From the IMG/VR virus record IMGVR_UViG_3300042484_002457, positions 145,544 through 209,543 of that record: DNA of 64,000 nt; one strand, written 5' to 3'. This document shows, piece after piece, positions 22,477-62,729 of the stretch. Below the pieces are notes generated by a model that saw only the letters and a list, made by a program, of their open reading frames with translations, ran no database searches and was not told the origin of the DNA. Made by a program: the position numbers and the translations under genes. Position 1 is the first letter of the stretch. Each line of letters begins with the position of its first letter.

Positions 22477-23112
22477 TTAATTTTTAGAAGCAGCTCTTCT
22501 CTGGTGTGCTAGTCTCATACGTTCTTTGGTCTCCGCAGAATGCGTTTTTCCTAGCATGCCCGACACTTTAGGTTTTTTACTGTATGTCTCTCTAAGAGAC
22601 TCTTTAATTTTCTTTTTTGTTTCTTCCGATCGCATCGATTTGCTACGCGAATTTCCAATTAGTGATTTACTAATTTTTTCCTTAGTTTCATCACTGGTTA
22701 TTTGCAAGGCTCGTTTATTGCGAATTTTTTGTTTGATTTTCTCAGATAGCATTTTGCCTGTTTGAGCAAGACGAATACTATTCTTGTGTTCTTCACTAAG
22801 TGATTCGCACTTGAATCGATTTTTTCCGTGAAAACAAGATCGATTCAATAGTAAATTGCTACCCCAGTTTTCAAATATCAATTGCTGTTCAAAATCGTAT
22901 GCATCATTGCCAGTATAAAACTCTGCAATAATATACCATACATAATCATCAAAGTTGTTAGAAACAATAAGGGATGATGTTTTATAATACATAAAATCTA
23001 CATTAGATGGTAATGTGTTGGCTTCTCTGTAGCCGATATAAAATTCTTTTGATTCTTTATGAATGCACATATAAACATACGGCATTGCCTTCGTTGATGG
23101 ATAAGTATTCAT
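22477..23112 (-). CDS. GIY-YIG-type homing endonuclease with NUMOD3 repeats
   Basis: YVYMCIH...FYIGYR; repeated (L/H)SEE.K.KI and GKTHSAETKERM motifs; start MNTYP after SD AAAAGGAG. Confidence 0.8.
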   Translation of the reverse strand: MNTYPSTKAMPYVYMCIHKESKEFYIGYREANTLPSNVDFMYYKTSSLIVSNNFDDYVWYIIAEFYTGNDAYDFEQQLIFENWGSNLLLNRSCFHGKNRFKCESLSEEHKNSIRLAQTGKMLSEKIKQKIRNKRALQITSDETKEKISKSLIGNSRSKSMRSEETKKKIKESLRETYSKKPKVSGMLGKTHSAETKERMRLAHQRRAASKN

Positions 23113-23180
23113 GCTGATTGCTCCTTTTAGCATTAGAGCCGGTGGATGCGTCCAACATCGCGACTGGCAACTTTATTTAT
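23113..23180 (-). promoter_or_regulatory. structured endonuclease leader (second copy)
   Basis: ATAAATA late promoter, nested hairpin, CTCTAATGC spacer, SD; homologous to 4651-4720. Confidence 0.7.
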
Positions 23181-23242: not shown

Positions 23243-25906
23243 ATTAGCTACGTAGACAGTTTATTTGATCGTGAGCACGATCGCATTCATGTTGTTGAGC
23301 GCCGTGATGGTGTTCGCAAATATCAAGAATACCCGGCCAATTATGTTTTTTATTACGACGACCCACGTGGCAAGTTCAAAAGCATTTATAGTACGCCAGT
23401 ATCAAGATTCAGCACACGCAACAACAAAGAGTTTCGCAAAGAAGTTCGCATGCATTCCGGCAAGCAACTTTACGAAAGCGACATCAACCCTATCTTTAGG
23501 TGCTTGGAAGAAAACTACAAAGATGTCGATGCTCCAGAACTGCACACAGCATTTTTCGACATTGAAGTAGATTTTGATAAAGTTCGGGGTTTTAGTCCTG
23601 TTGAAGATCCATTCAATCCTATCACTGCAATTTCTGTTTATCTAGATTGGTTGGATCAGTTAATAACCTTGGCGGTGCCGCCCAAGGGCCTGAGTTGGGA
23701 AACTGCGCAAGATTTGGTCAAAGAATTTGATAATACTATTCTGTTTGATAACGAAGCAGACATGATCAAAACTTTTCTTGATCTCATTGACGATGCAGAC
23801 GTACTGTCAGGTTGGAACTCGGAAGGTTATGACATTCCGTACACTGTAAACAGAACCATACGTATTCTCAGCAAAGACGATACTCGTAAGTTTTGTTTAT
23901 GGGGGCAGTTGCCCAAGAAGCGCATGTTCGAACGCTTTGGTGCTGAACAAGAAACTTATGACTTGGTGGGCCGTGTTCACATGGACTATATGCAGTTGTA
24001 CCGCAAGTACACTTATGAAGAACGGCACAGCTACAGCTTGGACGCCATTGCTGAATACGAGCTAGGTGAACGCAAAACACAGTTTGAAGGTACACTGGAT
24101 TCCTTGTATAATCAACACTTCAAGACATTTATTGAATACAACCGTCAAGATACCTTGTTGTTAAACAAGCTGGACAAGAAATTGCGATTCCTGGAACTGG
24201 CCAGCGAACTGGCACATGCCAACACTGTGCTACTACAGACCACCATGGGCGCTGTGGCAGTTACCGAACAGGCCATTATCAACGAAGCACACGAACGTGG
24301 CATGGTTGTGCCCAATCGCAAACAGCGACTGGACAGTGAAGACACACAAGCAGCTGGAGCATATGTTGCATATCCCAAAAAAGGCATGCACGAGTGGGTG
24401 GGATCAGTAGACATTAACTCACTGTATCCGTCGGCCATTCGAGCCATGAACATGGGCCCCGAGACTGTGATTGGACAGTTGCGACCCATCATGACTGACA
24501 GGTATATTGCAGACAAAATGGCCAAGAACCGTGGCAACTTTGCTGACGCCTGGGAAGGCTTGTTTGGATCGCTTGAATACACTGCTGTGATGGAACAGAA
24601 TCGTGGCACTGAAATCATCATCGACTGGGAGTCAGGCCAAGAAACCAAGCACAGTGCCGCTGAAGTTTGGAACTTGATGTTTGACAGTAACCAGCCTTGG
24701 ATTTTGACTGCAAACGGTACTATTCTAAGTTTTGAGAAACGAGGTATCATTCCTGGTTTGCTGGAGCGTTGGTATAGTGAACGTAAAGAAATGCAGGCCA
24801 AGAAAAAAGATGCCACTGATCCCAAAGAGATTGCGTTCTGGGACAAGCGACAACTGGTCAAAAAGATTAACTTGAACAGCTTGTATGGTGCTATTTTGAA
24901 TCCAGGTTGCAGATTCTTTGACAAACGCATTGGACAGTCAACCACACTCACTGGTCGAGCAATTGCTAGACACATGGATGCTTACATCAATGAATGTGTA
25001 ACTGGCAAGTACGACCACCTGGGCGAAGCAGTGATTTATGGTGACACAGACTCATGCTATTTCTCAGCCTGGCCGGTGCTACAGAAGGAAGTTGAACAAG
25101 GACGTATGGAGTGGAGCAAGGAAACTTGTATTGCACTGTATGATTCAATTGCAGACCAAGTCAACGAAAGCTTTCCTACATTCATGGAACAGGCATTTCA
25201 TTGTCCCAGAGACATGGGCTCATTGATCAAGTGTGGTCGAGAAATGGTTGCAGATCGCAGTTTGTTTATCACAAAGAAACGCTATGCCGTAAACATCATT
25301 GATCTAGAAGGCAAACGACTAGATGTCAATGGCAAGATTGGCAAGACCAAGGCCACTGGCTTGGACTTGAAACGTAGTGATACACCCAAAGTTATTCAAG
25401 ACTTCTTGTTGGAAATTCTAAATAGTCTGTTGGCAGGCGCTGACAAAGATACTATTGTAGAAAAAATTCGTGAGTTCAAATACAAGTTTATGGAACGCCC
25501 GGGTTGGGAAAAAGGCTCACCCAAGCGTGTGAACAACTTGACCAAGTACGCTGCTGACGAAGCACGTGAAGGCAAAGCAAACATGCCTGGTCATGTGCGA
25601 GCAGCACTGAACTGGAACAACCTGCGTAGAATGAACTCGGACAACTACAGTATGCAGATTGTGGATGGTATGAAAACCATTGTGTGCAAGCTCAAGAGCA
25701 ATGCACTGGGCTGGACGTCAATTGGTTATCCCACAGATGAACAACGTTTGCCTGCTTGGTTTACAGAATTGCCGTTTGATAACGACCTCATGGAAGCCAC
25801 TGTTGTGGACAAAAAAGTTGACAACTTGTTGGGTGTACTAGAATGGGATCTAGCCTCAGCAACCAATACTGAAAATACATTTACATCATTGTTTAGCTTT
25901 GAATGA
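23243..25906 (+). CDS. family B DNA polymerase with 3'-5' exonuclease, probable non-canonical ATT start
   Basis: FDIE, SGWNSEGYDIPY, YNRQD exo motifs; DINSLYPS, KINLNSLYG, YGDTDS, KKRY; open frame continues 69 codons upstream of ATG 23450 to GGAG-N7-ATT AGC TAC GTA GAC. Confidence 0.9.
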   Translation: MSYVDSLFDREHDRIHVVERRDGVRKYQEYPANYVFYYDDPRGKFKSIYSTPVSRFSTRNNKEFRKEVRMHSGKQLYESDINPIFRCLEENYKDVDAPELHTAFFDIEVDFDKVRGFSPVEDPFNPITAISVYLDWLDQLITLAVPPKGLSWETAQDLVKEFDNTILFDNEADMIKTFLDLIDDADVLSGWNSEGYDIPYTVNRTIRILSKDDTRKFCLWGQLPKKRMFERFGAEQETYDLVGRVHMDYMQLYRKYTYEERHSYSLDAIAEYELGERKTQFEGTLDSLYNQHFKTFIEYNRQDTLLLNKLDKKLRFLELASELAHANTVLLQTTMGAVAVTEQAIINEAHERGMVVPNRKQRLDSEDTQAAGAYVAYPKKGMHEWVGSVDINSLYPSAIRAMNMGPETVIGQLRPIMTDRYIADKMAKNRGNFADAWEGLFGSLEYTAVMEQNRGTEIIIDWESGQETKHSAAEVWNLMFDSNQPWILTANGTILSFEKRGIIPGLLERWYSERKEMQAKKKDATDPKEIAFWDKRQLVKKINLNSLYGAILNPGCRFFDKRIGQSTTLTGRAIARHMDAYINECVTGKYDHLGEAVIYGDTDSCYFSAWPVLQKEVEQGRMEWSKETCIALYDSIADQVNESFPTFMEQAFHCPRDMGSLIKCGREMVADRSLFITKKRYAVNIIDLEGKRLDVNGKIGKTKATGLDLKRSDTPKVIQDFLLEILNSLLAGADKDTIVEKIREFKYKFMERPGWEKGSPKRVNNLTKYAADEAREGKANMPGHVRAALNWNNLRRMNSDNYSMQIVDGMKTIVCKLKSNALGWTSIGYPTDEQRLPAWFTELPFDNDLMEATVVDKKVDNLLGVLEWDLASATNTENTFTSLFSFE

Positions 25907-26876: not shown

Positions 26877-27599
26877 ATGAGAGATCATCTTTTAGATTTA
26901 GTAGAACACACTTTTGACCTTGGTTGTATTGACCTAGTTAAAATTACCGGCGACGATACCAGTACACAAATTGCCGGCCTGGCCGAAGATTTAAGTGTGG
27001 TAATTCAAGCCAACTTCCACAATCCTGTGGCAGACTTTATTGGCACATTTGGCATGCCAAACTTGGCCAAACTCAAGACCTTGCTTAATCTGCAAGAGTA
27101 CAAAGAACATGCCAAGCTTACCATTACACGCAAAGTCACAGGCGAACCTGATGGTATCAATTTTGAAAACAAAGCTGGCGACTTTAAAAACAACTACAGA
27201 TTCATGGCCAGTGAGATTGTAAACGACAAACTCAAAACTGCCAAGTTCAAAGGTGTTAACTGGCACATTGAATTTGAGCCCACAAACGCCAGTATCCAAA
27301 GACTCAAGTGGCAAATGAGCGCCAACACTGAAGAGCCTAACTTTCAAGCCAAGACTGAAAACGGTGATCTCAAGTTCTTCTTTGGTGATCACTCAACTCA
27401 TGCTGGTAACTTTGTGTTCCAAGCTGGTGTTACAGGACAGTTGAAACGTGCATGGTCGTGGCCAGCAGCTCAGGTTGCTAGCATCCTGAGCCTTACAGGT
27501 GACAAAGTTGTGCGCATCAGCGACGACGGTGCTGCACAGATCACAGTGGATTCTGGCTTGGCCGTGTACAACTACATCTTACCAGCACAAAGCAAGTAA
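26877..27599 (+). CDS. DNA sliding clamp (gp45/PCNA-like)
   Basis: 240 aa alpha/beta repeat pattern, ends ...YNYILPA, adjacent to PolB. Confidence 0.6.
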   Translation: MRDHLLDLVEHTFDLGCIDLVKITGDDTSTQIAGLAEDLSVVIQANFHNPVADFIGTFGMPNLAKLKTLLNLQEYKEHAKLTITRKVTGEPDGINFENKAGDFKNNYRFMASEIVNDKLKTAKFKGVNWHIEFEPTNASIQRLKWQMSANTEEPNFQAKTENGDLKFFFGDHSTHAGNFVFQAGVTGQLKRAWSWPAAQVASILSLTGDKVVRISDDGAAQITVDSGLAVYNYILPAQSK

Positions 27600-29233
27600 T
27601 GAGCGAACCAATCAGTCAAGATGATCTCACAGCCAAGCAGTTGACCTATGCTGTGTTCCTTCCGGCTATAAGTGGTTTCTATGCTACATTTGTGGGCCGC
27701 CAAAGAAATGAACCGTATGTGGATCCTGCAAGATTTCCACAGGGTCTTAAGGATATGGAACAGCTTAACTGGCTCAACTCTAGCAAGGCCCTGTTTCCTT
27801 ATCGATGGAGCCTCTACTCAGGCGGTCATGCCAACTTGGATCTCTCAAAGCAGGATTGGTCAGAGGACATGGTACGAAGTCGGGAGCCTGGGAATTTTAT
27901 ACTGGGAGACTCGGGCGGCTTTCAGATTGCCAAGGGACTATGGGAAGGTGACTGGAAAGCCAACTCAGGTTGTGCCAAGGCACAGAAAAAACGAGACGGT
28001 GTCCTAAAGTGGTTGGATAACATTGCTGATTACGGCATGATTCTTGATATTCCCACCTGGGTTATTCATGACAAGAAGTCTAGCCAGGCTTGCGGAATTT
28101 CTACCTTGGATCAAGCATTTGAAGCCACCAAGTTCAACAACGAATATTTCATTGCCAATCGCCGAGGCAAAGAAAATGGCGGTGCCAAATTCCTAAACGT
28201 GTTACAAGGTGATAATCATACCTCAGCAGAGATTTGGTATCAAGAGATGAAGAAATTTTGTGATCCTGCTCAATACCCTGGACGTCACTTTGATGGTTGG
28301 GCCATGGGCGGACAGAACATGTGCGATGTACACCTGGTGTTGAAACGCCTGGTGGCATTGCGTTATGATAACTTGCTGCAAGAAGGTGTGCATGATTGGA
28401 TGCACTTTTTGGGAACCAGCAAGCTAGAGTGGGCAGTTCTCTTAACTGTTATTCAACGAGCCGTAAGGAAATATGTCAATCCAGCGTTTACCATCTCTTT
28501 TGATTGCGCCAGCCCATTCCTCGCAACAGCGAACGGACAGGTCTACTATGAAAATGTCTTCCCGCAAGACGGCAAATGGTCGTATCGCATGGCTCCTTCA
28601 GCCGATGACAAAAAATACTCCACTGACACACGAAAGTGGAATACAGGAGTAATTGCTGATGGTATCTATCCGCGTTGGCAAGATAGTCCCATAAGTGATA
28701 TGTTGACCATGAAGGATGTTTGCATCTACAAAGATGGTATACCCAAGGCTGGTGTTACTATTACCGAAGAAAATTTTAAAGATCCTGCGCTATACGATGT
28801 ATTGCCAGATCAAAACAAAAATGGTAAATGGGGCAAAACAAGCTGGGATAGTTTTAGCTATGCCTTGCTCATGGGTCACAATGTGTACATGCACTTGACT
28901 GCTGTGCAAGAAGCCAATCGACGTTTTGATGCAGGAGAGCATCCTGCCATGATGCGTCGAGATGGTGGCAATTATGAGTATTTTGAACACATTGTAGAAG
29001 CCATTTTTGCTGCACCAGATAGGCAAACTGCTGATGCCATAATTGAACAATACAGTTCATACTGGATGCAAATTGTGGGCACACGCGGATTCAAAGGCAA
29101 AAAAGCCATGAATGCACGTACACAGTTCAACGCACTGTTTGATTTAGAAGAAACTGCGGTTGAAGACGAATTGGATGATAGTGTACAATTAGACAACAAC
29201 AAACTTGATCAACTAGAACAGGACCAGCAATGA
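27599..29233 (+). CDS. guanine transglycosylase superfamily protein (TGT/DpdA-like)
   Basis: LGDSGGFQI, MILDIP, LNVLQG, GWAMGG, MHFLG, SFDCAS, MGHNV motifs in TGT order; no CxCxxC zinc site. Confidence 0.8.
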   Translation: MSEPISQDDLTAKQLTYAVFLPAISGFYATFVGRQRNEPYVDPARFPQGLKDMEQLNWLNSSKALFPYRWSLYSGGHANLDLSKQDWSEDMVRSREPGNFILGDSGGFQIAKGLWEGDWKANSGCAKAQKKRDGVLKWLDNIADYGMILDIPTWVIHDKKSSQACGISTLDQAFEATKFNNEYFIANRRGKENGGAKFLNVLQGDNHTSAEIWYQEMKKFCDPAQYPGRHFDGWAMGGQNMCDVHLVLKRLVALRYDNLLQEGVHDWMHFLGTSKLEWAVLLTVIQRAVRKYVNPAFTISFDCASPFLATANGQVYYENVFPQDGKWSYRMAPSADDKKYSTDTRKWNTGVIADGIYPRWQDSPISDMLTMKDVCIYKDGIPKAGVTITEENFKDPALYDVLPDQNKNGKWGKTSWDSFSYALLMGHNVYMHLTAVQEANRRFDAGEHPAMMRRDGGNYEYFEHIVEAIFAAPDRQTADAIIEQYSSYWMQIVGTRGFKGKKAMNARTQFNALFDLEETAVEDELDDSVQLDNNKLDQLEQDQQ

Positions 29234-29757
29234 ATCGAGAAGGTCATGACAACGTCAACTTTTTTGTGGGAACAGAAGTTGAGCGTACACCAGCATTTGG
29301 AAAGCGCACACTATTTGTGGTAGGAGTGCAACCGGTTGCAGAAATTCAAGACTGGCTGGATGACTTAAACAGCTACGAAGATCAATCCAAGCACGTCAAG
29401 CATATCTTCTTTGGTGCCAATCACAGTTTTTGCCCAGACAACAACTCAGAATGGGCACAATGGGAAGGCATGATTGGGCACTTTCTTAAAAAAGGTCACA
29501 TGTGCAGTCTTGATATTCCTGTCAAGTGTGTGGAAGAATTTAACGATTCGGGCTTGTGCGAGTATCGTAACTTTGTTCCGCAGATTCGAGTAAGCATTCC
29601 GTATGTGCGGCTATGGAACTACAACACCATGATCAAGATTGACGACAACAATTTTGATGCAACCAACCCAGGAGTGTGGACTCACAGTTTGCACAGCCTG
29701 ATGTCAAGACGAACATTCACTGACTGGGATCAGTACAACGAGGACAAACCTGTATGA
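29230..29757 (+). CDS. hypothetical protein coupled to the TGT-like gene
   Basis: 175 aa, ATGA overlaps on both sides. Confidence 0.75.
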   Translation: MNREGHDNVNFFVGTEVERTPAFGKRTLFVVGVQPVAEIQDWLDDLNSYEDQSKHVKHIFFGANHSFCPDNNSEWAQWEGMIGHFLKKGHMCSLDIPVKCVEEFNDSGLCEYRNFVPQIRVSIPYVRLWNYNTMIKIDDNNFDATNPGVWTHSLHSLMSRRTFTDWDQYNEDKPV

Positions 29758-30182
29758 ATCAACAACAAAGAGAAACCGTGGAAAGAATTAAAAGTGCAGC
29801 AAAACGACAAATCTGGGTCACCTTTCAACGTGCCGGATTTCATCGTTATCCAGCAGCTAGCGAAGATCCAAAATTAAGTGACGTAAGCTATCTTGGATCT
29901 CGGCATAGACACCTGTTTAAATTTAAGGTAGAGATTGAAATTTTTCATAACGATCGTGAGTTAGAATTCCATCAGGTCCTAAATTATTGCGAATCTCTTT
30001 ACAAAGACACCCATCTCGAAATAGATTACAAAAGTGTTGAAATGCTTGCAGATGATCTGTATCTACAATTAGCCAGTAGATATCCAGGAAGATTCATGTC
30101 CATTGAAGTAAGTGAAGACGGCGAGTGCGGATGTAGGATTGAATACAAAACTCAACAACCAAATTTGATGGTCAAGATTTAA
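29754..30182 (+). CDS. T-fold QueD/PTPS-like protein (divergent)
   Basis: GFHRYP, HRHLF, KSVEMLADDL, EVSEDGECG pattern. Confidence 0.55.
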   Translation: MNQQQRETVERIKSAAKRQIWVTFQRAGFHRYPAASEDPKLSDVSYLGSRHRHLFKFKVEIEIFHNDRELEFHQVLNYCESLYKDTHLEIDYKSVEMLADDLYLQLASRYPGRFMSIEVSEDGECGCRIEYKTQQPNLMVKI

Positions 30183-30225
30183 GATTGATATGGAATATAT
30201 GCTAAATATCCGTAGAGGAAATGCT

Positions 30226-30942
30226 ATGAAATATTATGTGTATATACTATCTGACCCAAGAAACAACGTTCCTTTTTATATAGGTAAGGGCAAAGGCAAA
30301 AGATCTATGTCCCACCTTAAGGAAACAAAAGAAACTACAATCAACATTAGAAAATATAATAAGATACAATCAATTTTCAGTGAAGGTCTGACACCCTTGA
30401 TTTCTTACTATGCCACTGACTTGTCTGAGCAAGATGCTTATGAATTAGAAGCTTCTCTTATTAAACAATACGGACGCAAAGATTACGATGCTAACGGAAT
30501 CTTACTTAACATTTGTGAAAACAATCGCCCTCCTGGGCACGATAATTTTTTAACCAACAACCCTGGATTGAGGATGAAAGGGAAAACGTATGAGGAGATC
30601 TACGGTGAAGAAAAAGCCAAACAGTTAAAACTTCAAAGAACATTATCTTCTTCTGTAAGAGAAGTTACACAAGAGACTAAAGACAGAATGAAAGAATCTG
30701 CCCTTGTCAAGATGGCTAATGGATACAAAATGCCGTCAAGAAAAGGAAAGAGAGATTCTGAAGAGACACGTTTGAAAAAATCTTTGGCACACAGAGGCAA
30801 AATTAAGCCGTCGATGAGCGAAGAGACAAAGAAAAAAATTTCAGACACAAAGCGAAAAAATAGTAAAAAATTTTTAAACATTCAATATTTAAGGAAGTAC
30901 CATGGCCAAGCCTACATTCAAACCCAACCAGCGCCTGACTGA
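30226..30942 (+). CDS. GIY-YIG homing endonuclease with NUMOD3-like basic C-terminus
   Basis: YYVYILSDPRNNVPFYIGKGKGKR..H, E..LI..YGR, LLN; own TAAATA promoter 30203-30208. Confidence 0.85.
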   Translation: MKYYVYILSDPRNNVPFYIGKGKGKRSMSHLKETKETTINIRKYNKIQSIFSEGLTPLISYYATDLSEQDAYELEASLIKQYGRKDYDANGILLNICENNRPPGHDNFLTNNPGLRMKGKTYEEIYGEEKAKQLKLQRTLSSSVREVTQETKDRMKESALVKMANGYKMPSRKGKRDSEETRLKKSLAHRGKIKPSMSEETKKKISDTKRKNSKKFLNIQYLRKYHGQAYIQTQPAPD

Positions 30943-31398: not shown

Positions 31399-32613
31399 AT
31401 GCGAAAGTTAATTTATATGGGACTCGAACAACTGGAGTCAAGATACACACTACAGCTAACTGAGTGGAATCGACGGGTATTTGATCGTCGAGGGCTCGAT
31501 GTTGTCTATGTCCCTGGGCTAAACATTGATAATACTAAACAGATTTCTGTTGGACAAGTTTTAGATGCTCATGGTCGAAGTTATTTTTCTATGAGCCAGA
31601 TGATGAACTTAGTTCAGATGATGCGTAATGGAGAAATTACAAACGAAGATGTAGTGTATTTCGAGGACATGTTTACTCCTGGCTTCGAAAGTCTTGGTTA
31701 CATCATGAATCAGATTCCCCGCGAGCAGTGCCCACGCATCTATGTTCGCTGTCTAGCACAAGCTATTGATCCTGATGACTTTGTGCATGTTTGGGGCATG
31801 GCTCGATGGATGAACTTGTATGAACAAATGGTCAATGAGATGGTGGTTTTCTCGGGGGGTGCAGTATTGGCAACCAATGAGGAAATGGTCGCGCACATGC
31901 GCATCGCTGGATGGACTGCTCCAATCTACAACATTTCTGGGTTGGCATTTGGAAAAACAGAAGTACTGGAGCGGATCGGTGGGAAAGAAAACATCCGGCC
32001 GTTTGATTCGCGTCCGCGGAGGGTGGGTTTCGCAGCTAGGTTCGACCAAGAGAAACAGCCTGGTTTTTTCATGGACCTTATTGAAATGTACGGTGAGCTC
32101 ACCAATGAACCATGTGAGTTTGCAATTTTCAGTGGGGGGCCACTCAGGTCTAATAATCCAGAGTACGTGGAGAGAGCCCGCCGCATGGAATCCAAAGGCA
32201 AACTCCAGATTTACGAAAATCTAAACAAGAATCAGTATTATGATTTACTTAACAATACTCGTGTTCTCTTTAATTGTGCTCTTCAAGACTGGGTATCTAA
32301 CACTGTATCCGAAGCCGACACTGTGGGGTGCAATGTTCTTTACCCTGCATATCGTAGCTTTCCTGAAACTTTTGCAAATGATCCTAACCGACTATATGTT
32401 CCTTGGAGCATAGATGACGCTTATCATAAGATACAAAATTTATTGCGAGAACCGCATCACAACATGGGTCTCATCTCGGATTGGAACAACGCCACTATTG
32501 ACCGTATTGTTGATATTATTACTGGTCGAGGTGAGCAATGGAATCGGGCGGGCAATCGATATCGTGACCACGTTGCTCACGAAAAATATCAAGTTGTAAA
32601 GATTGAGGAATGA
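31399..32613 (+). CDS. GT-B (GT4-like) glycosyltransferase
   Basis: GFAARFDQEKQP, RVLFNCALQDWVSNTVSEA..GCNVLYP (ExF/E-x7-E-like) C-terminal GT-B domain. Confidence 0.7.
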   Translation: MRKLIYMGLEQLESRYTLQLTEWNRRVFDRRGLDVVYVPGLNIDNTKQISVGQVLDAHGRSYFSMSQMMNLVQMMRNGEITNEDVVYFEDMFTPGFESLGYIMNQIPREQCPRIYVRCLAQAIDPDDFVHVWGMARWMNLYEQMVNEMVVFSGGAVLATNEEMVAHMRIAGWTAPIYNISGLAFGKTEVLERIGGKENIRPFDSRPRRVGFAARFDQEKQPGFFMDLIEMYGELTNEPCEFAIFSGGPLRSNNPEYVERARRMESKGKLQIYENLNKNQYYDLLNNTRVLFNCALQDWVSNTVSEADTVGCNVLYPAYRSFPETFANDPNRLYVPWSIDDAYHKIQNLLREPHHNMGLISDWNNATIDRIVDIITGRGEQWNRAGNRYRDHVAHEKYQVVKIEE

Positions 32614-33554
32614 GCACCGTAGTTGTAACAGGAGCTTCTGGATATATTGGAGGGCAATGTGCTCTCCAATTGCACGATGCTGGCCACCAGGTGGTTGGCA
32701 TTGATCGCAGGCCGCTGCCTTTGCAGTTGAAGGGCATGATACAGTTTGTGCAGGCTGACTTTGACAGTGACGAGTCGTTTAGAAAAATCATTGAGCTAAG
32801 ACCCAGTGCCATAATTCACTGTGCCGGTACTAGTCTTGTGGGACCAAGCATCCGGCATCCATCAGACTACTACAACAACAACGTGGTCAAGACCTTGCAC
32901 CTGTTGGGTATAATTGTGTCAGCTGTGCCCCGGACTAGATTTATTTTTAGTAGCAGTGCAGCCACATACGGAGTTCCCGCAGCCAGCTTGCCCTGCCAAG
33001 AAACTGATGCGCTAAAGCCTATCAGTCCATACGGTGAAAGCAAGCAGATGGTAGAACAAATCCTTAAATCATACCATCGTGCTTACAATTTAGACTATGT
33101 GGCATTTCGTTATTTCAATGCTTGCGGGGCTGATCCACAACAACGACATGGGCAAGAGCCTGGTGCCACACACATTATTGCTCGTGTGCTAGAAAGCATT
33201 AGAGACCAACAGGAGTTTACGTTGTATGGTAACGATTACGATACACGAGACGGGACTTGTGTTCGCGACTATGTTCATGTTGGTGATATTGCGCAGGCAC
33301 ATGTTGCAGCCCTGTCTAATAAAATTCCTGCGGGCATCTACAATCTCGGATCTAGCACTGGAACCAGCAACCAAGAAATAATTGCTGCGGCTGAACGTAT
33401 CACTGGGCAAAAGGTCCAGCTGCATCACAGTGCTAGGCGCGAGGGTGATCCTGACGTGTTAGTAGCTGATGCTGCTCGGTTTAATCAGCTGGTACACTGG
33501 CAACGTTTTGATCTAGATCACATGATTCAACATGCATGGAACTGGTATGTTTGA
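32610..33554 (+). CDS. galE: UDP-glucose 4-epimerase-like extended SDR
   Basis: VTGASGYIGG, HCAG, SSSAATYG, YGESK, RYFNACGAD, RDYVHV, RREGD. Confidence 0.85.
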   Translation: MSTVVVTGASGYIGGQCALQLHDAGHQVVGIDRRPLPLQLKGMIQFVQADFDSDESFRKIIELRPSAIIHCAGTSLVGPSIRHPSDYYNNNVVKTLHLLGIIVSAVPRTRFIFSSSAATYGVPAASLPCQETDALKPISPYGESKQMVEQILKSYHRAYNLDYVAFRYFNACGADPQQRHGQEPGATHIIARVLESIRDQQEFTLYGNDYDTRDGTCVRDYVHVGDIAQAHVAALSNKIPAGIYNLGSSTGTSNQEIIAAAERITGQKVQLHHSARREGDPDVLVADAARFNQLVHWQRFDLDHMIQHAWNWYV

Positions 33555-34134
33555 TAAAATTTTAAAATTTGAACAAGAGCTAGCAGAGTTTACAGGTGCG
33601 CCCTATGCCATCATGACTGACTGCTGCACTCATGCCATAGAATTGTGCCTGCGTCATGAACGAGTGCAAGAAGTTGTAATGACTCCTTACACCTACTTGA
33701 GCATTCCTATGACCATGCACAAGTTGGACATTCGTTACTACTATCGAGAAGAAGAGTGGACTGGAGAATATCAGTTTCATGGCACACGCATCTGGGATTC
33801 AGCACGTAGACTGGAACCCAACATGTATCGAACTGGACAAATGCAATGCTTGAGTTTTGGGCATGACAAGCCTTTACACATAGGCCGTGGTGGTGCTATA
33901 CTACTAGATAACGAGTCAGCATATCGTCGACTAATTCGTATGAGGTACGATGGTCGCGATCTAAATATATCGCCCTGGGCAACACAAAAGGAATTTGAGG
34001 TTGGATATCATTACAAGCCCACTCCCGAAGAAGCTGTGCAAGGACTTGCACAGCTGGAAGGTTTGCGTGAGTTTTGTGCTCCTCCGCGAGCAGTTGTGTA
34101 TCCAGATTTAAGAACCATCACTATCAAGAACTAA
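33547..34134 (+). CDS. DegT/DnrJ-family PLP aminotransferase-like protein, short
   Basis: FEQELAEFTGAPYAI, CTHAIELCL, WDSA, LSFGHDKPLHIGRGGAIL; only 195 aa. Confidence 0.7.
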   Translation: MFDKILKFEQELAEFTGAPYAIMTDCCTHAIELCLRHERVQEVVMTPYTYLSIPMTMHKLDIRYYYREEEWTGEYQFHGTRIWDSARRLEPNMYRTGQMQCLSFGHDKPLHIGRGGAILLDNESAYRRLIRMRYDGRDLNISPWATQKEFEVGYHYKPTPEEAVQGLAQLEGLREFCAPPRAVVYPDLRTITIKN

Positions 34135-34135
34135 T

Positions 34136-34837
34136 ATGACAGATACAAGCAAACACCTATCACAAGCAATCCGCGAGCGTATGAAATCCGACGGCAAGAG
34201 ATTCTGGGCCGGGGACAACATTAGTGAATACATCAAACCAGAAGAACGCAGACTGCTAATCGACGAGGCTGCAGAAGCATTTGAAGTAGTACTGGACCGA
34301 CTACTGATTGATCGAGAAACAGATCCCAACTCAAAGGGCACAGCCCGTAGGTTGGCCAAAATGTACTACAATGAAATAATGGCAGGTAGATATGAACAAG
34401 CACCAGATGCAACAGCATTTCCAAACGATTCGCAGGACCGCTACGAAGGTATGCTCGTGGTTCGCAGTGAACTTCGTAGTATGTGTAGTCATCATCACCA
34501 ACCCGTTGCTGGGGTTGCTTATATTGGCATTATTGCGGCAGAGAAATTAATTGGCCTCAGCAAGTACACCCGAATCGCACAGTGGTGCGCCCGCCGTGGT
34601 ACACTACAAGAAGAACTATGTAATGACATTGCTCGCGAGATTAGCAAGGCTACTGAATCAGAAAACGTAGCAGTATATGTGCAGGCAATTCATGGTTGTT
34701 GTGAGAATCGTGGTATTATGGCTCACAGTAGTCTTACACAGACCACAGTTCTTAGAGGCGCTTTCAAAGAAGATCAAAGTGTCAAGAAAGAGTTCTTTGA
34801 CAACATCAAGTTGCAGCAGGACTTTGCACCACGTTAA
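34136..34837 (+). CDS. folE: GTP cyclohydrolase I
   Basis: TARRLAKM, SMCSHHHQP, GLSKYTR, QEEL, HGCCENRG. Confidence 0.95.
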   Translation: MTDTSKHLSQAIRERMKSDGKRFWAGDNISEYIKPEERRLLIDEAAEAFEVVLDRLLIDRETDPNSKGTARRLAKMYYNEIMAGRYEQAPDATAFPNDSQDRYEGMLVVRSELRSMCSHHHQPVAGVAYIGIIAAEKLIGLSKYTRIAQWCARRGTLQEELCNDIAREISKATESENVAVYVQAIHGCCENRGIMAHSSLTQTTVLRGAFKEDQSVKKEFFDNIKLQQDFAPR

Positions 34838-36632: not shown

Positions 36633-37130
36633 ATGCAACCAGTAGTTTACAAATACACAAGTACTAAAGAATATCACGATGCGTTTCCGTGTGCTTATCG
36701 ACAATGGCGGGCCGACAGCCATTGCAATCTAATTCACGGATACAGCTTCTCAATGAAGTTCTATTTTGGCACCAACGATCTTGATGTTCGCAATTGGGCA
36801 GCTGATTACGGTGGCCTCAAGGAACTAAAGAAAATATTAGAAGACCAATTTGATCATACACTGATCGTGGCACAAGATGACCCTGAACTAGAAACCTTCA
36901 AGCTTTTACAAGAGCGCAAGATGGCCAAGATTGTTGTGTTGCCAAAGCTGGGCTGCGAAGGACTGGCTGACCAACTGTACAAGTTTGTGAACGGCATCTA
37001 TATTCCTGAAAACTGGGGACCTGGAGAAGCCGAACGCTTGTGGTGCTATCGTGTGGAAGTTCGCGAAACACAGGCAAACATGGCTTTCCGTGAAGGCCAC
37101 CGTGAATGGAACGAAGATTTATTTGCCTAA
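36633..37130 (+). CDS. queD: 6-carboxy-5,6,7,8-tetrahydropterin synthase
   Basis: FPCAYRQW...HCNLIHGYS, DYGGLK, FDHT, GCEGLA, VEVRET. Confidence 0.85.
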   Translation: MQPVVYKYTSTKEYHDAFPCAYRQWRADSHCNLIHGYSFSMKFYFGTNDLDVRNWAADYGGLKELKKILEDQFDHTLIVAQDDPELETFKLLQERKMAKIVVLPKLGCEGLADQLYKFVNGIYIPENWGPGEAERLWCYRVEVRETQANMAFREGHREWNEDLFA

Positions 37131-40943: not shown

Positions 40944-41789
40944 ATGAAATTAAAAGTAAGTGAACTATTTTATTCTGCACAAGGCGAAGGCCGCTATGTA
41001 GGCGTTCCTTCAATTTTCCTCCGCACATTTGGTTGTAACTTCACCTGTTCAGGCTTTGGTTGTAAGCCTGGAGAAAAAAGCACAGGTGCTGACGAAGTTG
41101 CCAAGACTGTGCATTTATACAAGACTTTTGAAGAACTGCCATTAGTAGATACTGGCTGCGACAGCTATGCTAGTTGGCATCCAGACTTCAAACATCTAAG
41201 CCCCACATACACTCCTGAAGAACTTGTGGAAAAGATGGCAGCATTGTTGCCTAACAATAACTGGCAACAACCCAACGGCAACCCTGTACACTTGGTTATC
41301 ACTGGTGGCGAGCCATTGCTGGGCTGGCAGCGAGCATATCCTGAGTTGTTGGACCTGTTGCACGAACGTGGTTTGCGACACATTACATTTGAAACCAATG
41401 GTACTCAAGAACTCACACGTGACTTCAAACAGTATCTGGCAAACTGGCACGGTGAGATCACATTCTCAGTAAGCCCCAAGCTGAGTGTATCAGGTGAGAC
41501 TTGGGCAGATGCAATCAAGCCAGATATTGTATGGGATTACGAAACACATGGCATCACTTACTTGAAGTTTGTGGTAGACAAGATTGAAGACTTCGACGAG
41601 CTGGATCGTGCTGTGGATGAGTATCGACTGCGTGGTTTCAGTGGCCCCGTGTTCGTGATGCCAGTGGGCGGTGTGGTTAGCGTATATGACAGCAATAGAA
41701 TTCATGTTGCAGACGAAGCACTCAAACGCGGTTACTGGTATACCCCAAGATTGCATGTGGATCTTTGGGGCAATGGCTGGGGGAAATAA
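40944..41789 (+). CDS. queE: 7-carboxy-7-deazaguanine synthase (radical SAM)
   Basis: ELFYSAQGEG, FLRTFGCNFTC..., VITGGEPL, FETNGT, SVSPKL, LKFVV, PRLHVDLWG; long insert before third Cys. Confidence 0.9.
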   Translation: MKLKVSELFYSAQGEGRYVGVPSIFLRTFGCNFTCSGFGCKPGEKSTGADEVAKTVHLYKTFEELPLVDTGCDSYASWHPDFKHLSPTYTPEELVEKMAALLPNNNWQQPNGNPVHLVITGGEPLLGWQRAYPELLDLLHERGLRHITFETNGTQELTRDFKQYLANWHGEITFSVSPKLSVSGETWADAIKPDIVWDYETHGITYLKFVVDKIEDFDELDRAVDEYRLRGFSGPVFVMPVGGVVSVYDSNRIHVADEALKRGYWYTPRLHVDLWGNGWGK

Positions 41790-42498: not shown

Positions 42499-42883
42499 TT
42501 GGTTTAAGAAAAAGCCCAAAGCAACAGCAGAGCCAAAGCCTGCTAAAGAGCCCCGCGTCAAGGCACCTGTCAAGACTGACAAGGACATTGCTACAGAAAA
42601 CAAAGAGCCTTATGTGGCCATGATCCGCATGGACATTGATCCCAACAATTTGCACCAAGGTGCATTTGAACTGGACTGGAACGATATTTTTGTAGCAAGG
42701 CTGGTCAAGGCTGGCTACATGATGAAGCCTGAAGATACTGATGCTGAAATTGTAGATCGCTGGTTCCAGAACGTGTGCAGACATGTTGTGATGGAAACAT
42801 GGGAACAAGAACAAGCCATGCGCAAATCAGGCGTATGGGTCAAGAGCACCGACATTGGTGGCGGACGAAGTGAGGTATCATGA
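42491..42883 (+). CDS. hypothetical protein
   Basis: 130 aa from MFDWFKK, coupled overlaps. Confidence 0.7.
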   Translation: MFDWFKKKPKATAEPKPAKEPRVKAPVKTDKDIATENKEPYVAMIRMDIDPNNLHQGAFELDWNDIFVARLVKAGYMMKPEDTDAEIVDRWFQNVCRHVVMETWEQEQAMRKSGVWVKSTDIGGGRSEVS

Positions 42884-51766: not shown

Positions 51767-51841
51767 CTGGCGTTCGTATAATGGATAATACAGGGGATTT
51801 CTACTCCCTAAATAGCGGTTCGATTCCGTTACGCTGGACCA
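51767..51841 (+). tRNA. tRNA-Arg(TCT)
   Basis: CTGGCGT/ACGCTGG, GGGGA-TTTCTAC-TCCCT, GGTTCGATTCC, CCA. Confidence 0.9.
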
Positions 51842-51854
51842 AACTACTACAAAA

Positions 51855-61873: not shown

Positions 61874-61948
61874 GCCATAGTAGTCCTCGGGGAGGGCAAC
61901 GGATTGTCTATCCGTACCAGGTGGGTTCGAGTCCCATCTATGGCGCCA
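61874..61948 (+). tRNA. tRNA-Asp(GTC)
   Basis: GCCATAG/CTATGGC, ACGGA-TTGTCTA-TCCGT, G73, CCA. Confidence 0.9.
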
Positions 61949-61954
61949 ATATAT

Positions 61955-61994
61955 TCGAACTCTGCTAAATACTATGGTATTAGATGGAGTTCGA
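61955..61994 (+). promoter_or_regulatory. SD-sequestering hairpin with late promoter in the loop
   Basis: TCGAACTC 61955-61962 / GAGTTCGA 61987-61994 covers GGAG; TAAATA 61966-61971. Confidence 0.75.
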
Positions 61995-61995
61995 T

Positions 61996-62472
61996 ATGAA
62001 AAAAGTTTGTCCCAAATGCGGCACATTACATGAAAAGAATGGTAATTTTTGCTCAAGAAGTTGTGCAAATTCCAGGTCCTGGACTGTTGATGCAAAGCAG
62101 AAAAAAAGTAAAGCATTGAAGAAATTCATTGCAGAAAACCCAATCTGGGAGGAGCAGCGCCTTGCTGCTATGCCCAAAATGATTGAAAATTTGAAACAAA
62201 CTTTGCTTGAAAAAAACAACCTTAGGTTTTCTGAAGGAAAAATAACAAGCAGAGAAGCCATTAAGAAACAACTAATTGCATTACACGGAGAAATCTGTAG
62301 CGTATGCAGTCTTAGTGCTCATTGGCATGGGCACTTCTTATCGTTGCATGTTGATCATGTTGATGGTAATAGTAAAAATAATATGCCAGATAACGTTAGA
62401 CTACTGTGCCCAAATTGTCATAGTCAGACTGATACGTATGCTGGAAAGAAGCATAGAAAGATTAAGATCTAA
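61996..62472 (+). CDS. HNH endonuclease inserted in tRNA cluster
   Basis: CPKC...FCSRSCAN; CSVC...LHVDHVDGN..NN...NVRLLCPNCH. Confidence 0.9.
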   Translation: MKKVCPKCGTLHEKNGNFCSRSCANSRSWTVDAKQKKSKALKKFIAENPIWEEQRLAAMPKMIENLKQTLLEKNNLRFSEGKITSREAIKKQLIALHGEICSVCSLSAHWHGHFLSLHVDHVDGNSKNNMPDNVRLLCPNCHSQTDTYAGKKHRKIKI

Positions 62473-62562
62473 ATTAGATCCACCAGTTTTATAGGAGAGT
62501 CGCTGCGAAGCGAATTCTTAAACGACCCGTAGAACTCCCGGGCGTCCTGTAGTTAGTATTTT

Positions 62563-62648
62563 GGAGTCGTAGGAAAATTGGTAACCCCAGTGGACTGTAA
62601 ATCCGCCGCCCTAGTGCATTGCTGGTTCAACTCCAGCCGGCTCCACCA
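62563..62648 (+). tRNA. tRNA-Tyr(GTA)
   Basis: GGAGTCG/CGGCTCC, GTGGA-CTGTAAA-TCCGC, long V arm, CCA. Confidence 0.95.
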
Positions 62649-62653
62649 ATTTA

Positions 62654-62729
62654 GGTCTTAAAGTGTTCATGGACGCACGATGGCTTGTCACGCCATAAGA
62701 GTGGGGATCGTTACCCCCTAAGACCGCCA
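62654..62729 (+). tRNA. tRNA-Asp(GTC), second copy
   Basis: GGTCTTA/TAAGACC, ATGGC-TTGTCAC-GCCAT, T-loop ATCGTTA, CCA. Confidence 0.9.

What the first reader, a model, noticed from the sequence alone, without database searches (positions are those of the whole stretch)
27599..29757. Atypical 544 aa transglycosylase lacking the TGT zinc site, with a tightly coupled unknown partner
Seen: all TGT catalytic motifs and the terminal HN, but no CxCxxC; large insertions and an acidic tail; ATGA-coupled to a 175 aa unknown and the second T-fold protein. The phage also encodes Asp(GUC) and Tyr(GUA) tRNAs, the classic TGT substrates. Inference: more likely DNA-directed (replication context), possibly a divergent DpdA subfamily with accessory subunits; tRNA targeting is not excluded.
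Basis: partly seen in the sequence, partly recalled or inferred. Interest (0 to 1): 0.6.

Follow-up and report, generated by a model that had tools for sequence, protein, structure and literature searches.

The report
Divergent phage DNA-guanine transglycosylase (DpdA-like)
This jumbo-phage gene encodes a very divergent, so far unannotated relative of the enzymes that swap guanine in phage DNA for a 7-deazaguanine base to escape host restriction; it is probably the "missing" base-inserting enzyme of PA5oct-like phages and of a very abundant uncultured phage lineage.

Summary
ORF 27599-29233 (544 aa) matches no Pfam, PHROG, NCBIfam or PDB sequence. Its AlphaFold model (pLDDT 89.9) is a TGT-type TIM barrel: arcTGT Z 18.2, QTRT2 16.6, bacterial TGT 16.4, DpdA 15.2, Cap10 14.6, and unrelated barrels at 11.6 or less.

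- **Catalytic residues.** Both aspartates are invariant in 90 diverse relatives: D104 in DSGGFQ and D302 in FDC, equivalent to Z. mobilis D102 and D280. The base-pocket residues are largely kept.
- **Zinc site.** There is no Cys3His site; only His427 remains. This is also true of known phage DpdAs, so it is not atypical.
- **Closest known family.** Phage DpdA2 (nt-1/VH7D/ACP17 type), which has been shown to insert preQ0, preQ1 and CDG into DNA: hhalign 97%, E 7e-11. Plain sequence search does not connect the two.
- **Context.** The gene order PolB, 240-aa protein, this gene, 175-aa unknown, DpdL is kept in about 80 related contigs. A GT-like gene, FolE, QueD and QueE follow.
- **Other family members.** PA5oct, whose DNA shows signs of modified G and for which no DpdA is reported, Sinorhizobium phage Phosso, and Vibrio phage 2.275.O, where the gene sits beside QueF, QueC and YhhQ.

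It is most likely a new DpdA subfamily that acts on DNA. The 175-aa neighbour is conserved, but neither its function nor any binding to the enzyme is shown.

The parts
27599..29233 (+). 544-aa TGT-superfamily protein (P0001): predicted DNA guanine/7-deazaguanine transglycosylase of a new DpdA-like subfamily. D104 is the general acid/base, D302 the nucleophile and D150/Q203/G233-G238 the base pocket. It has no zinc site, a beta-rich expansion at about 314-417, a helix carrying H427-N428, and an acidic disordered tail from 495 to 544.
   Evidence: Structure model pLDDT 89.9. Fold matches to arcTGT, TGT, QTRT2, DpdA and Cap10 at Z 14.6-18.2, against 11.6 or less for other barrels. Foldseek vs Z. 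mobilis TGT 2.8e-7. hhalign to DpdA2 97.1% and to E. coli Tgt 91.3%. Residue conservation.
29230..29757 (+). 175-aa conserved protein of unknown function (P0002), translationally coupled (ATGA) to the transglycosylase gene.
   Evidence: Directly downstream in 73 of 81 related loci. Homologues are ACP17 gp122, immediately upstream of the ACP17 DpdA2 gene, and PA5oct EST35_0364 (40% identity, 28 kb away). The model is confident (pLDDT 91) but has no significant structural match; the best is QueE at Z 6.3 and TM 0.58. hhalign to QueE gives 1.4%.
29754..30182 (+). 142-aa DpdL homologue (P0003): a QueD paralogue predicted by Cui et al. 2023 to decarboxylate CDG to 7-deazaguanine.
   Evidence: phmmer 8e-53 to ACP17 gp125, 1.6e-28 to PA5oct EST35_0318 and 1.5e-12 to phiST DpdL CGPG_00067. 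The DpdL signature LxxxHRHxF is present at L47-F55 (PMC10516641). Matches phrog_17812.
26877..27599 (+). 240-aa conserved protein (P0004, phrog_12062), always found between PolB and the transglycosylase gene. Function unknown.
   Evidence: Present in 78 of 81 loci. Homologues are PA5oct EST35_0314 ('structural protein', MS) and Vibrio 2.275.O _465. No PDB sequence match.
23450..25906 (+). Family B DNA polymerase, the replication-module anchor of the locus.
   Evidence: Pfam DNA_pol_B 7.9e-36 and the exonuclease domain 1.4e-19. Syntenic in 78 of 81 loci and in PA5oct, L100 and L102.
31399..32613 (+). 404-aa GT-B-like protein that co-occurs with DpdA and DpdL in four phage lineages.
   Evidence: Weak Glycos_transf_1 hits. 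Homologous to X1 WEM34306 (1.6e-15), PA5oct EST35_0317 (5e-12) and ACP17 gp124 (1.6e-9), each adjacent to the DpdA gene.
34136..34837 (+). FolE, GTP cyclohydrolase I: the first step of 7-deazaguanine synthesis.
   Evidence: Pfam PF01227 2.3e-40.
36633..37130 (+). QueD (CPH4 synthase, PTPS family).
   Evidence: Pfam PF01242 4e-14. 1.5e-55 to ACP17 QueD.
40944..41789 (+). QueE-like radical SAM enzyme (CDG synthase).
   Evidence: Weak Radical_SAM and Fer4_12 hits. phmmer 5.5e-36 to X1 QueE and 1.2e-31 to PA5oct QueE.
61874..62729 (+). tRNA-Asp(GTC) x2 and tRNA-Tyr(GTA). These are relevant only to the rival tRNA-targeting idea.
   Evidence: ARAGORN.

Best explanation
P0001 is a phage DNA transglycosylase of the DpdA kind, from a large, previously unnamed subfamily whose nearest known relative is DpdA2.

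Inferred mechanism, by analogy with TGT and DpdA: the enzyme flips a guanine out of double-stranded phage DNA. D302 (the FDC motif, equivalent to Z. mobilis TGT D280) attacks C1' to form a covalent enzyme-DNA intermediate and release guanine. D104 (the DSGGFQ motif, equivalent to D102) acts as general acid/base. A free 7-deazaguanine base, held by D150, Q203 and G233-G238, is then installed.

The base is made by the phage's own FolE, QueD and QueE, which give CDG. Because a DpdL homologue is present and no QueC was found, the base is probably then decarboxylated to 7-deazaguanine or converted to a further derivative.

The zinc subdomain of tRNA TGTs is replaced by a beta-rich expansion and extra C-terminal helices. 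The acidic tail may tether the enzyme to replication proteins; this is speculation.

P0002 is a co-inherited helper of unknown role. The modified DNA would resist host restriction enzymes.

Shown here: the fold, conservation of the catalytic residues, profile homology to DpdA2, and the gene context. Inferred: the DNA substrate, the identity of the base, and the roles of P0002 and of the tail.
For: - **Fold.** TGT-family structures are the five best matches of 48,161 chains, at Z 14.6-18.2, against 11.6 or less for other barrels. More than 165 Foldseek PDB matches pass E 1e-3; the 50 listed are all tRNA-guanine transglycosylases.
- **Viral structures.** The best named viral matches are phage transglycosylases, including nt-1 DpdA2 at 4.5e-9.
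- **Catalytic residues.** D104 and D302 are invariant in 90 relatives sharing 25-60% identity. The pocket residues are nearly invariant.
- **Profile comparison.** hhalign gives DpdA2 97.1% with E 6.6e-11, E. coli Tgt 91.3% and DpdA3 86%.
- **Experimental backing for the relatives.** nt-1 and VH7D DpdA2 insert preQ0, preQ1 and CDG into DNA in E. coli (PMC10516641).
- **Context in the window.** FolE, QueD, QueE and DpdL lie nearby, and the QueC profile found only weak sub-threshold matches in the record.
- **Synteny.** The order PolB, P0004, P0001, P0002, DpdL, GT, FolE holds in about 80 contigs with 54-100% identity.
- **Other family members.**
  - In PA5oct the gene lies between PolB and QueE.
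  - In Vibrio 2.275.O it sits with QueF, YhhQ, QueC and FolE.
  - In Phosso it is beside primase and DnaB.
- **PA5oct DNA.** It resists five restriction enzymes, which indicates modified G. QueE and PTPS were reported in that phage but no DpdA (PMC12191111).
- **Absences.** The 209-kb record has no other TGT homologue. No part of the P0001 model matched the PUA or other C-terminal tRNA-binding domains of arcTGT.
Against: - No assay exists for any member of this family.
- Similarity to verified DpdAs shows only at profile or structure level. phmmer gives under 4 bits.
- By structure the protein is about equally distant from tRNA TGTs (arcTGT Z 18.2) and from bacterial DpdA (Z 15.2), so fold alone does not decide the substrate.
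- DpdL's decarboxylase activity has never been demonstrated. Cui et al. failed to detect dDG in E. coli.
- Some distant family members have no deazaguanine-synthesis genes within 10 kb.
- The record is only about 58% complete, so a QueC or a second transglycosylase could lie in the missing part.
Confidence: 0.75

Rival explanations
1. It is a tRNA-guanine transglycosylase. It would put a 7-deazaguanine into position 34, or another position, of phage-encoded or host tRNAs (Asp, Tyr and others) to tune translation during infection.
For: The window encodes tRNA-Asp(GTC) x2 and tRNA-Tyr(GTA), the classic Q34 substrates. By structural Z-score, arcTGT (18.2) and bacterial TGT (16.4) match slightly better than bacterial DpdA (15.2). 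The catalytic machinery is shared by RNA and DNA enzymes.
Against: The Pfam TGT model gives no match. The zinc subdomain that tRNA TGTs use for dimerisation is absent, and no part of the model matched a PUA or other tRNA-binding domain. The closest profile and viral fold matches are DNA-acting DpdA2. The gene sits in the replication module beside PolB in many lineages, far from the tRNA cluster 32 kb away. The presence of DpdL and the absence of a detected QueC or QueF do not give a known tRNA base. DNA of the relative PA5oct shows signs of modified G.
Confidence: 0.08
2. It has the TGT fold but another target or chemistry. It might modify a protein, like the CBASS accessory Cap10. It might act as a DNA glycosylase that only removes bases. 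It might work on free nucleosides or nucleotides, so that the modified base enters DNA through the polymerase before replication.
For: Cap10 is among the five best structural matches (Z 14.6). One distant family member has a phosphoribosyltransferase two genes downstream, which hints at base-to-nucleotide salvage in some contexts. The large C-terminal expansion has no assigned role.
Against: Cap10 is the weakest of the five TGT-family matches, and no CD-NTase or Cap9 context is present. Both aspartates and the base-pocket residues needed for base exchange are conserved. Cui et al. argue that all known 7-deazaguanine DNA modifications are made after replication by DpdA. Profile similarity is best to DpdA2.
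Confidence: 0.1
3. It is an inactive, structural or regulatory TGT-like protein, comparable to the non-catalytic QTRT2 subunit, and some other enzyme makes the DNA modification.
For: QTRT2 is the second-best structural match (Z 16.6). The protein has unusual expansions.
Against: Both catalytic aspartates are invariant in 90 of 90 relatives and the pocket residues are conserved. No other TGT homologue exists in the record to serve as a catalytic partner.
Confidence: 0.04

Closest known systems
Phage DpdA2 (Vibrio phages nt-1 and VH7D, Acidovorax phage ACP17 gp123, Xanthomonas phage X1)
   Same: - TGT-type barrel with the DSGG(F/L)Q, (L/F)D(x)IP, (L/V)QG, H(x)LG(x)S and (F/Y)D(C/S) motifs aligned over about 185 columns (hhalign 97.1%, E 6.6e-11).
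- No CxCxxC zinc motif.
- Encoded with FolE, QueD and QueE. In ACP17 and X1 it is also encoded with DpdL and the GT-like protein, and in ACP17 with a P0002 homologue.
- DNA activity has been shown experimentally for nt-1 and VH7D.
   Different: - No similarity at BLAST or phmmer level (under 4 bits).
- P0001 is 80-120 residues longer, with a different N-terminal segment and a larger C-terminal region (beta-rich 314-417, extra helices, acidic tail).
- It forms its own family of at least 933 clusters at 50% identity.
- It is typically placed immediately after PolB and the 240-aa protein.
Phage DpdA3 (Cellulophaga phage phiST CGPG_00065, Campylobacter phages)
   Same: A distant TGT homologue that escapes ordinary searches. 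It is encoded next to DpdL and the CDG pathway without QueC, and is associated with complete G replacement. hhalign gives 86%, E 4.8e-6, over 82 columns.
   Different: phiST DpdA3 is only 259 aa. Its first motif is DNGA, not DSGGFQ. It aligns only in part. Its fold match is much weaker than that of DpdA2 (BFVD 5e-3 against 4.5e-9).
Bacterial DpdA (Salmonella Montevideo, PDB 7ui4)
   Same: Same fold (Z 15.2, 308 residues aligned). It inserts preQ0 into DNA.
   Different: Bacterial DpdA keeps a zinc motif in a supplementary domain (PMC5699537) and works with DpdB. Neither a DpdB nor a dpd island is present here. NCBIfam gives no match.
tRNA-guanine transglycosylases (bacterial TGT, archaeal arcTGT, eukaryotic QTRT1/2)
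   Same: Same barrel. Both catalytic aspartates and the pocket residues align (Z 16.4-18.2; hhalign to E. coli Tgt 91.3%). The C-terminal helix with His-Asn is retained.
   Different: The Cys3 part of the zinc site is missing. No part of the model matched the PUA or other C-terminal domains of arcTGT. The protein is not recognised by Pfam PF01702. The genomic context is DNA replication.

Membership tests
TGT superfamily (tRNA/DNA guanine transglycosylase fold) | Irregular (beta/alpha)8 barrel of the TGT type | tested here: met
   AlphaFold model with pLDDT 89.9 and pTM 0.90. The five TGT-family representatives score Z 14.6-18.2, against 11.6 or less for other barrels. Foldseek E 2.8e-7, with more than 165 matches below 1e-3; the 50 listed are all TGT entries.
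TGT superfamily (tRNA/DNA guanine transglycosylase fold) | Two catalytic aspartates (Z. mobilis D102 and D280) | tested here: met
   D104 (DSGGFQ) and D302 (FDC) align to E. coli Tgt DSGGFQ and FDC. Both are invariant in 90 of 90 relatives.
TGT superfamily (tRNA/DNA guanine transglycosylase fold) | Purine-pocket residues (S103, D156, Q203, G229/G230) | tested here: met
   S105 in 90/90, D150 in 89/90, Q203 in 75/90 (His in 10) and G233 in 86/90. These sit in the aligned motifs LDxPT, LNVLQG and GWAxxG.
TGT superfamily (tRNA/DNA guanine transglycosylase fold) | Cys3His zinc site (CxCxxC...H) | tested here: not met
   No CxCxxC is present. Only two scattered columns have Cys in 30% or more of members (positions 173 and 375), which is not a zinc cluster. 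Only H427 is kept, in 88%.
TGT superfamily (tRNA/DNA guanine transglycosylase fold) | Match to Pfam PF01702 above the gathering score | tested here: not met
   No hit at E up to 0.1 for the protein or at E up to 10 for the whole record. Only 3 of 90 relatives hit weakly, best 0.0087.
DpdA (DNA 7-deazaguanine transglycosylase) | Homology to an experimentally verified DpdA | tested here: met
   Met at profile level only: hhalign 97.1%, E 6.6e-11, to the DpdA2 profile of nt-1, X1 and ACP17. The A1 HMM scores 32.5 bits against ACP17 gp123. BFVD matches nt-1 DpdA2 at 4.5e-9.
DpdA (DNA 7-deazaguanine transglycosylase) | Encoded with 7-deazaguanine biosynthesis genes in a phage or DNA-metabolism context | tested here: met
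   FolE, QueD, QueE and DpdL lie within 13 kb and PolB is adjacent. The same holds in about 80 related loci, PA5oct and Vibrio 2.275.O.
DpdA (DNA 7-deazaguanine transglycosylase) | Base-exchange activity on DNA, and a modified base in virion DNA | not testable with these tools
DpdA2 subfamily specifically | Clusters with nt-1/VH7D-type proteins at sequence level, with a similar length and architecture | tested here: not met
   All-against-all phmmer gives under 4 bits between the P0001 group and the DpdA2 group, against 112-289 bits within the P0001 group and 138-176 within DpdA2. tblastn with ACP17 gp123 finds 71 phage records, none of the P0001 type. Lengths are 540-596 aa against 424-464 aa.
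DpdA3 subfamily | Sequence or profile similarity to phiST CGPG_00065 | tested here: inconclusive
   hhalign gives 86%, E 4.8e-6, over only 82 columns. HMM score 12.6 bits. BFVD 5e-3.
DpdA1 subfamily | Similarity to phage 9g gp03 | tested here: not met
   hhalign gives 1.2%, with only the xCDSSS motif aligned. phmmer gives no score.
DpdA4 (DUF6610, PF20314) | Match to PF20314 | tested here: not met
   No Pfam hit at E up to 0.1.
DpdL (for the 142-aa neighbour P0003) | Homology to phiST and ACP17 DpdL, and the signature LxxxHRHxF replacing the QueD motif CxxxHGH | tested here: met
   phmmer 8e-53 to ACP17 and 1.5e-12 to phiST. The motif L47-G-S-R-H51-R-H53-L-F55 is present. A direct profile comparison to QueD was weak (26%). 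The T-fold assignment therefore rests on Cui et al.'s HHpred result for phiST DpdL.
DpdL (for the 142-aa neighbour P0003) | CDG decarboxylase activity | not testable with these tools
   The literature only predicts this activity. The heterologous test failed (PMC10516641).

The most novel reading that the evidence does not exclude
The P0001-type enzyme, together with the co-inherited 175-aa protein, DpdL and the GT-B-like protein, installs a not yet described 7-deazaguanine derivative in DNA.

- These four genes recur in the window lineage and in ACP17, with a DpdA2-type transglycosylase in ACP17. PA5oct has all four, but its 175-aa homologue lies 28 kb from the others. X1 has the triad without a detected 175-aa homologue.
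- The derivative may carry a sugar or another hypermodification. Neighbouring genes point that way: an epimerase/dehydratase, an aminotransferase, a cytidylyltransferase, a Rieske protein and a B12-radical SAM protein.
- The phage lineage concerned is one of the most abundant uncultured jumbo-phage lineages.
- The enzyme's C-terminal expansion and acidic tail may couple it to the replisome for near-complete replacement of G.
Probability: 0.25. Interest if true: 0.8.

Novelty: new variant of a known kind. Interest (0 to 1): 0.6.

Why it matters
DpdA has been proposed as the signature gene for 7-deazaguanine in viral DNA (Cui et al. 2023). This family escapes Pfam, PHROGs, NCBIfam and BLAST, so genome surveys would score its hosts as lacking DpdA. 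PA5oct-like therapeutic Pseudomonas phages, Phosso, some Vibrio jumbo phages and thousands of metagenomic contigs fall into that gap.

Recognising the family would do three things:
- It closes a gap for PA5oct, where a modified G is suspected but no inserting enzyme was named.
- It enlarges the known diversity of DNA transglycosylases by a family with at least 933 clusters at 50% identity.
- It points to a conserved DpdA, GT-like and DpdL gene set that may make a new DNA base.

The DNA base matters for phage therapy, for restriction evasion, for defence systems that sense modification such as the END nucleases, and for sequencing of such DNA.

Tried and rejected
- **Family and sequence scans.** Pfam, PHROGs and NCBIfam scans of P0001 and P0002 gave nothing. 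phmmer of P0001 against PDB sequences gave nothing. The A1 profile against PDB gave only sub-threshold TGT hits (E 0.3-0.5), though in the right register.
- **Complex prediction.** Complex prediction of P0001 with P0002 scored 0.01 against a mark of 0.32. The verdict is 'no answer', so it counts neither for nor against binding.
- **P0002 as a cluster-less QueE paralogue.** QueE tops both the PDB and Atlas structure lists (Z 6.3, TM 0.58), but these values are below significance, and hhalign to a QueE profile gives 1.4%. I kept this only as a weak lead.
- **Atlas feature search for P0002.** It returned APOBEC-like clusters at scores of 0.79 or less, which is chance level, and I rejected it.
- **PDB sequence searches of the neighbours.** The A2 profile (P0002 family) found nothing at E up to 10, and the single-sequence searches of P0003, P0004 and the GT-like protein gave only chance-level hits.
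- **DpdL against QueD.** The profile comparison was weak (26%).
- **Genome scan.** The search for related loci in genome contigs with A1 failed because no usable pattern could be derived. I therefore did not test whether the family occurs in bacterial genomes.
- **Phylogeny.** I built no tree with TGT, arcTGT and DpdA1-4. The subfamilies are alignable only at profile level over about 180 columns, so a tree would not be trustworthy. I used pairwise profile and fold rankings instead.


Full report
**Setting.** The window is the last 64 kb of a 209.5-kb IMG/VR virus record that CheckV estimates to be 58% complete. It is a jumbo-phage fragment with eight tRNA genes. The finding covers three translationally coupled genes:
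- P0001, 27599-29233, 544 aa
- P0002, 29230-29757, 175 aa
- P0003, 29754-30182, 142 aa

The junctions are TAATG with the upstream gene and two ATGA overlaps.

**Is it a TGT-like protein?**

Ordinary annotation fails. P0001 has no hit in Pfam, PHROGs or NCBIfam. The Pfam TGT model finds nothing in the whole record, although it rings in all 14 control genomes. There is no PDB sequence hit.

The protein nevertheless belongs to a very large family. More than 7,257 clusters at 90% identity were found, on contigs of up to about 360 kb. At 50% identity there are 933 representative clusters at E of 1e-3 or better. All named members are called 'hypothetical'.

An alignment of 90 full-length representatives sharing 25-60% identity (A1) shows invariant S74, D104, S105, G107, H269 and D302. 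Q109, D150, P152, N200, G204, G233, L271 and G272 are nearly invariant.

With this alignment AlphaFold2 gives a confident model, with pLDDT 89.9 and pTM 0.90. Only the acidic tail, residues 495-528, is disordered.

An exhaustive structural comparison with 48,161 PDB representatives puts five TGT-family structures on top:

| Structure | PDB | Z |
|---|---|---|
| arcTGT | 1iq8 | 18.2 |
| QTRT2 | 6fv5 | 16.6 |
| Bacterial TGT | 3unt | 16.4 |
| DNA preQ0 insertase DpdA | 7ui4 | 15.2 |
| Cap10 | 9ntn | 14.6 |
| Generic TIM barrels | - | 11.6 or less |

Foldseek agrees, with a best E of 2.8e-7 and more than 165 matches below 1e-3; the 50 listed are all tRNA-guanine transglycosylase entries.

hhalign of A1 against E. 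coli Tgt (91.3%, E 9.6e-7) aligns DSGGFQ with DSGGFQ, LDIPT with FDECT, VLQG with IIQG, GWAMGG with GYAVGG, HFLG with YLMG and SFDCASP with MFDCVMP. The residue correspondences, using the roles given in PMC5699537, are:
- D104 corresponds to Z. mobilis D102.
- D150 corresponds to D156.
- Q203 corresponds to Q203.
- D302 corresponds to the nucleophile D280.

The C-terminal helix with H427-N428 aligns with the TGT helix that carries the fourth zinc ligand.

**Zinc site.** There is no CxCxxC. No column in the family has conserved Cys except two scattered ones, at positions 173 (69%) and 375 (52%). Only H427 (88%) survives. Phage 9g DpdA1, nt-1/X1/ACP17 DpdA2 and phiST DpdA3 also have no CxCxxC. 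The 2016 review already noted that 9g DpdA lacks two of the four ligands.

**Which known family is closest?**

| Compared with | hhalign of A1 |
|---|---|
| DpdA2 profile (nt-1, Xanthomonas X1, ACP17 gp123) | 97.1%, E 6.6e-11, 185 columns from DSGG to (F/Y)D(C/S) |
| E. coli Tgt | 91.3% |
| phiST DpdA3 | 86%, partial |
| 9g DpdA1 | 1.2% |

The viral structure library ranks the same way: a 596-aa uncharacterised viral protein, probably the Vibrio 2.275.O member (also 596 aa), at 1.7e-26, several uncharacterised proteins, Achromobacter phage Motura 'tRNA guanine transglycosylase' at 1.3e-11, nt-1 DpdA2 at 4.5e-9, and phiST DpdA3 at only 5e-3.

DpdA2 is experimentally validated. nt-1 DpdA2 inserts preQ0 into plasmid DNA in E. 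coli, and VH7D DpdA2 inserts preQ1, preQ0 and CDG (PMC10516641).

At plain sequence level the two groups are unconnected. phmmer gives under 4 bits between groups, against 112-289 bits within the P0001 group. The P0001 group is also 80-170 residues longer. I therefore treat it as a separate subfamily, not as a DpdA2 member.

**Context.** Within the window the gene follows a family B DNA polymerase, a 314-aa unknown and a 240-aa protein (phrog_12062). Downstream of P0001 lie, in order:
- P0002
- P0003
- a GIY-YIG homing endonuclease
- a GT-B-like protein
- an NAD-dependent epimerase/dehydratase
- a short DegT-like protein
- FolE
- a Rieske protein
- a PP-loop protein
- QueD
- a B12-binding radical SAM protein
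- QueE
- two DUF6071 proteins
- a cytidylyltransferase-like protein
- a 5'-3' exonuclease

P0003 is a DpdL homologue. It shares 60% identity with ACP17 gp125 (8e-53) and scores 1.5e-12 against phiST DpdL. It carries the DpdL signature LxxxHRHxF. Cui et al. describe this signature as the hallmark of the predicted CDG decarboxylase, which they found in phages that have DpdA, FolE, QueD and QueE but no QueC. No canonical QueC was found in the record. This fits that pattern, with the caveat that the record is incomplete.

In 81 related viral contigs with 45-100% identity (80 from IMG/VR at 54-100% and one Logan contig at 45%), the order PolB, 314-aa, 240-aa, P0001, P0002, DpdL, GT, epimerase, DegT, FolE, QueD is kept. 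P0002 is present in 73 of 81 loci and DpdL in 67 of 81; the rest are mostly truncated contigs.

Cultured phages with family members, all annotated as hypothetical, are:
- **PA5oct-like Pseudomonas jumbo phages.** The gene lies between PolB and QueE, followed by a GT-like protein and DpdL.
- **Sinorhizobium phage Phosso.** The gene is next to primase and DnaB.
- **Vibrio phage 2.275.O.** The gene is next to QueF, a YhhQ-type transporter, QueC and FolE.

More distant metagenomic members again sit right after PolB and a protein of about 250 aa.

[quoted passage not shown] PA5oct is also targeted by nucleases that sense modified G. The authors found QueE and a PTPS-like gene but named no transglycosylase (PMC12191111). 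The PA5oct homologue EST35_0316 is the obvious candidate.

**The partner.** P0002 is conserved, with 26 invariant positions among 38 sequences sharing 41-86% identity, and it models confidently at pLDDT 91. It has no significant structural or sequence relative. QueE tops both the PDB and Atlas lists (Z 6.3, TM 0.58), but this is below significance and profile comparison does not support it.

Outside its own lineage, P0002 has homologues only in ACP17 and in PA5oct-like phages. ACP17 gp122 lies immediately upstream of the ACP17 DpdA2 gene. The PA5oct homologue lies 28 kb from the transglycosylase gene. P0002 therefore travels with DpdL-type deazaguanine modules and not strictly with the P0001-type enzyme. 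The complex prediction gave no answer. P0002 is a functionally linked gene, but it is not shown to be a subunit.

**Mechanism and rivals.** The most likely function is post-replicative exchange of guanine in phage DNA for a phage-made 7-deazaguanine, through a D302-linked covalent intermediate. On present knowledge the base is DG or CDG. The alternatives are tRNA modification, another substrate or a pre-replicative route, and an inactive scaffold. Context, the nearest relatives and the invariant catalytic residues make each of these less likely, but none is excluded without an assay.

**Novelty.** Within the literature I could search, no paper assigns this family to DpdA, and the current Pfam, PHROG and NCBIfam libraries have no model for it. 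It is a new subfamily of a known enzyme kind. It has practical consequences for predicting DNA modification in jumbo phages. There is also a possible link to a still unknown hypermodified base, through the recurrent DpdA, GT-like and DpdL triad.

Noticed in passing
window 31399-32613 (+); also 32610-33554, 33532-34134, 34880-35698, 35688-36551, 37990-39990, 42880-43371: A GT-B-like protein has homologues directly beside the DpdA gene and DpdL in PA5oct (EST35_0317), ACP17 (gp124) and Xanthomonas phage X1 (WEM34306). In the window it is joined by an epimerase/dehydratase, a short DegT-like aminotransferase, a Rieske protein, a PP-loop protein, a B12-radical SAM protein and a cytidylyltransferase-like protein. 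This gene set could further decorate the deazaguanine, perhaps with a sugar.
   Followed up: partly
window 30190-30942 (+) and 22477-23133 (-): A GIY-YIG/NUMOD3 homing endonuclease sits between DpdL and the GT-like gene. It is found in only 1 of 81 related loci, so it is a recent mobile insertion. A second NUMOD3-containing ORF lies upstream of PolB on the other strand.
   Followed up: partly
window 26877-27599 (+): A 240-aa protein (phrog_12062) always lies between PolB and the transglycosylase gene: in 78 of 81 loci, in PA5oct (EST35_0314, detected in virions by MS) and in Vibrio 2.275.O; a similar-sized 'virion structural protein' (_439) holds that position in Phosso but was not matched by phmmer. 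In phage 9g the gene in that position is the sliding clamp. Whether this protein is a clamp was not tested.
   Followed up: no
contig of P0188 (no DNA held): A distant family member (622 aa, 32% identity) has a phosphoribosyltransferase (PF00156) two genes downstream. This hints that some relatives work alongside base-to-nucleotide salvage.
   Followed up: no
L001 1-4831 (PA5oct) and L102 2934-6384: In relatives, the PolB gene next to the transglycosylase is split. A Hef-like homing endonuclease gene splits it in PA5oct. In a metagenomic contig it is in two pieces, one with a weak intein signal. In the window it is intact.
   Followed up: no
window 33532-34134 (+): The DegT/DnrJ-type aminotransferase ORF is only 200 aa, whereas the family profile is 360 positions long. 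It matches the profile in two short stretches, so it may be truncated or degenerate. A similar ORF occurs in 35 related loci.
   Followed up: no
window 51767-63110 (+): The window carries a tRNA cluster: Arg-TCT, Leu-TAA, Leu-TAG, Glu-TTC x2, Asp-GTC x2 and Tyr-GTA.
   Followed up: no
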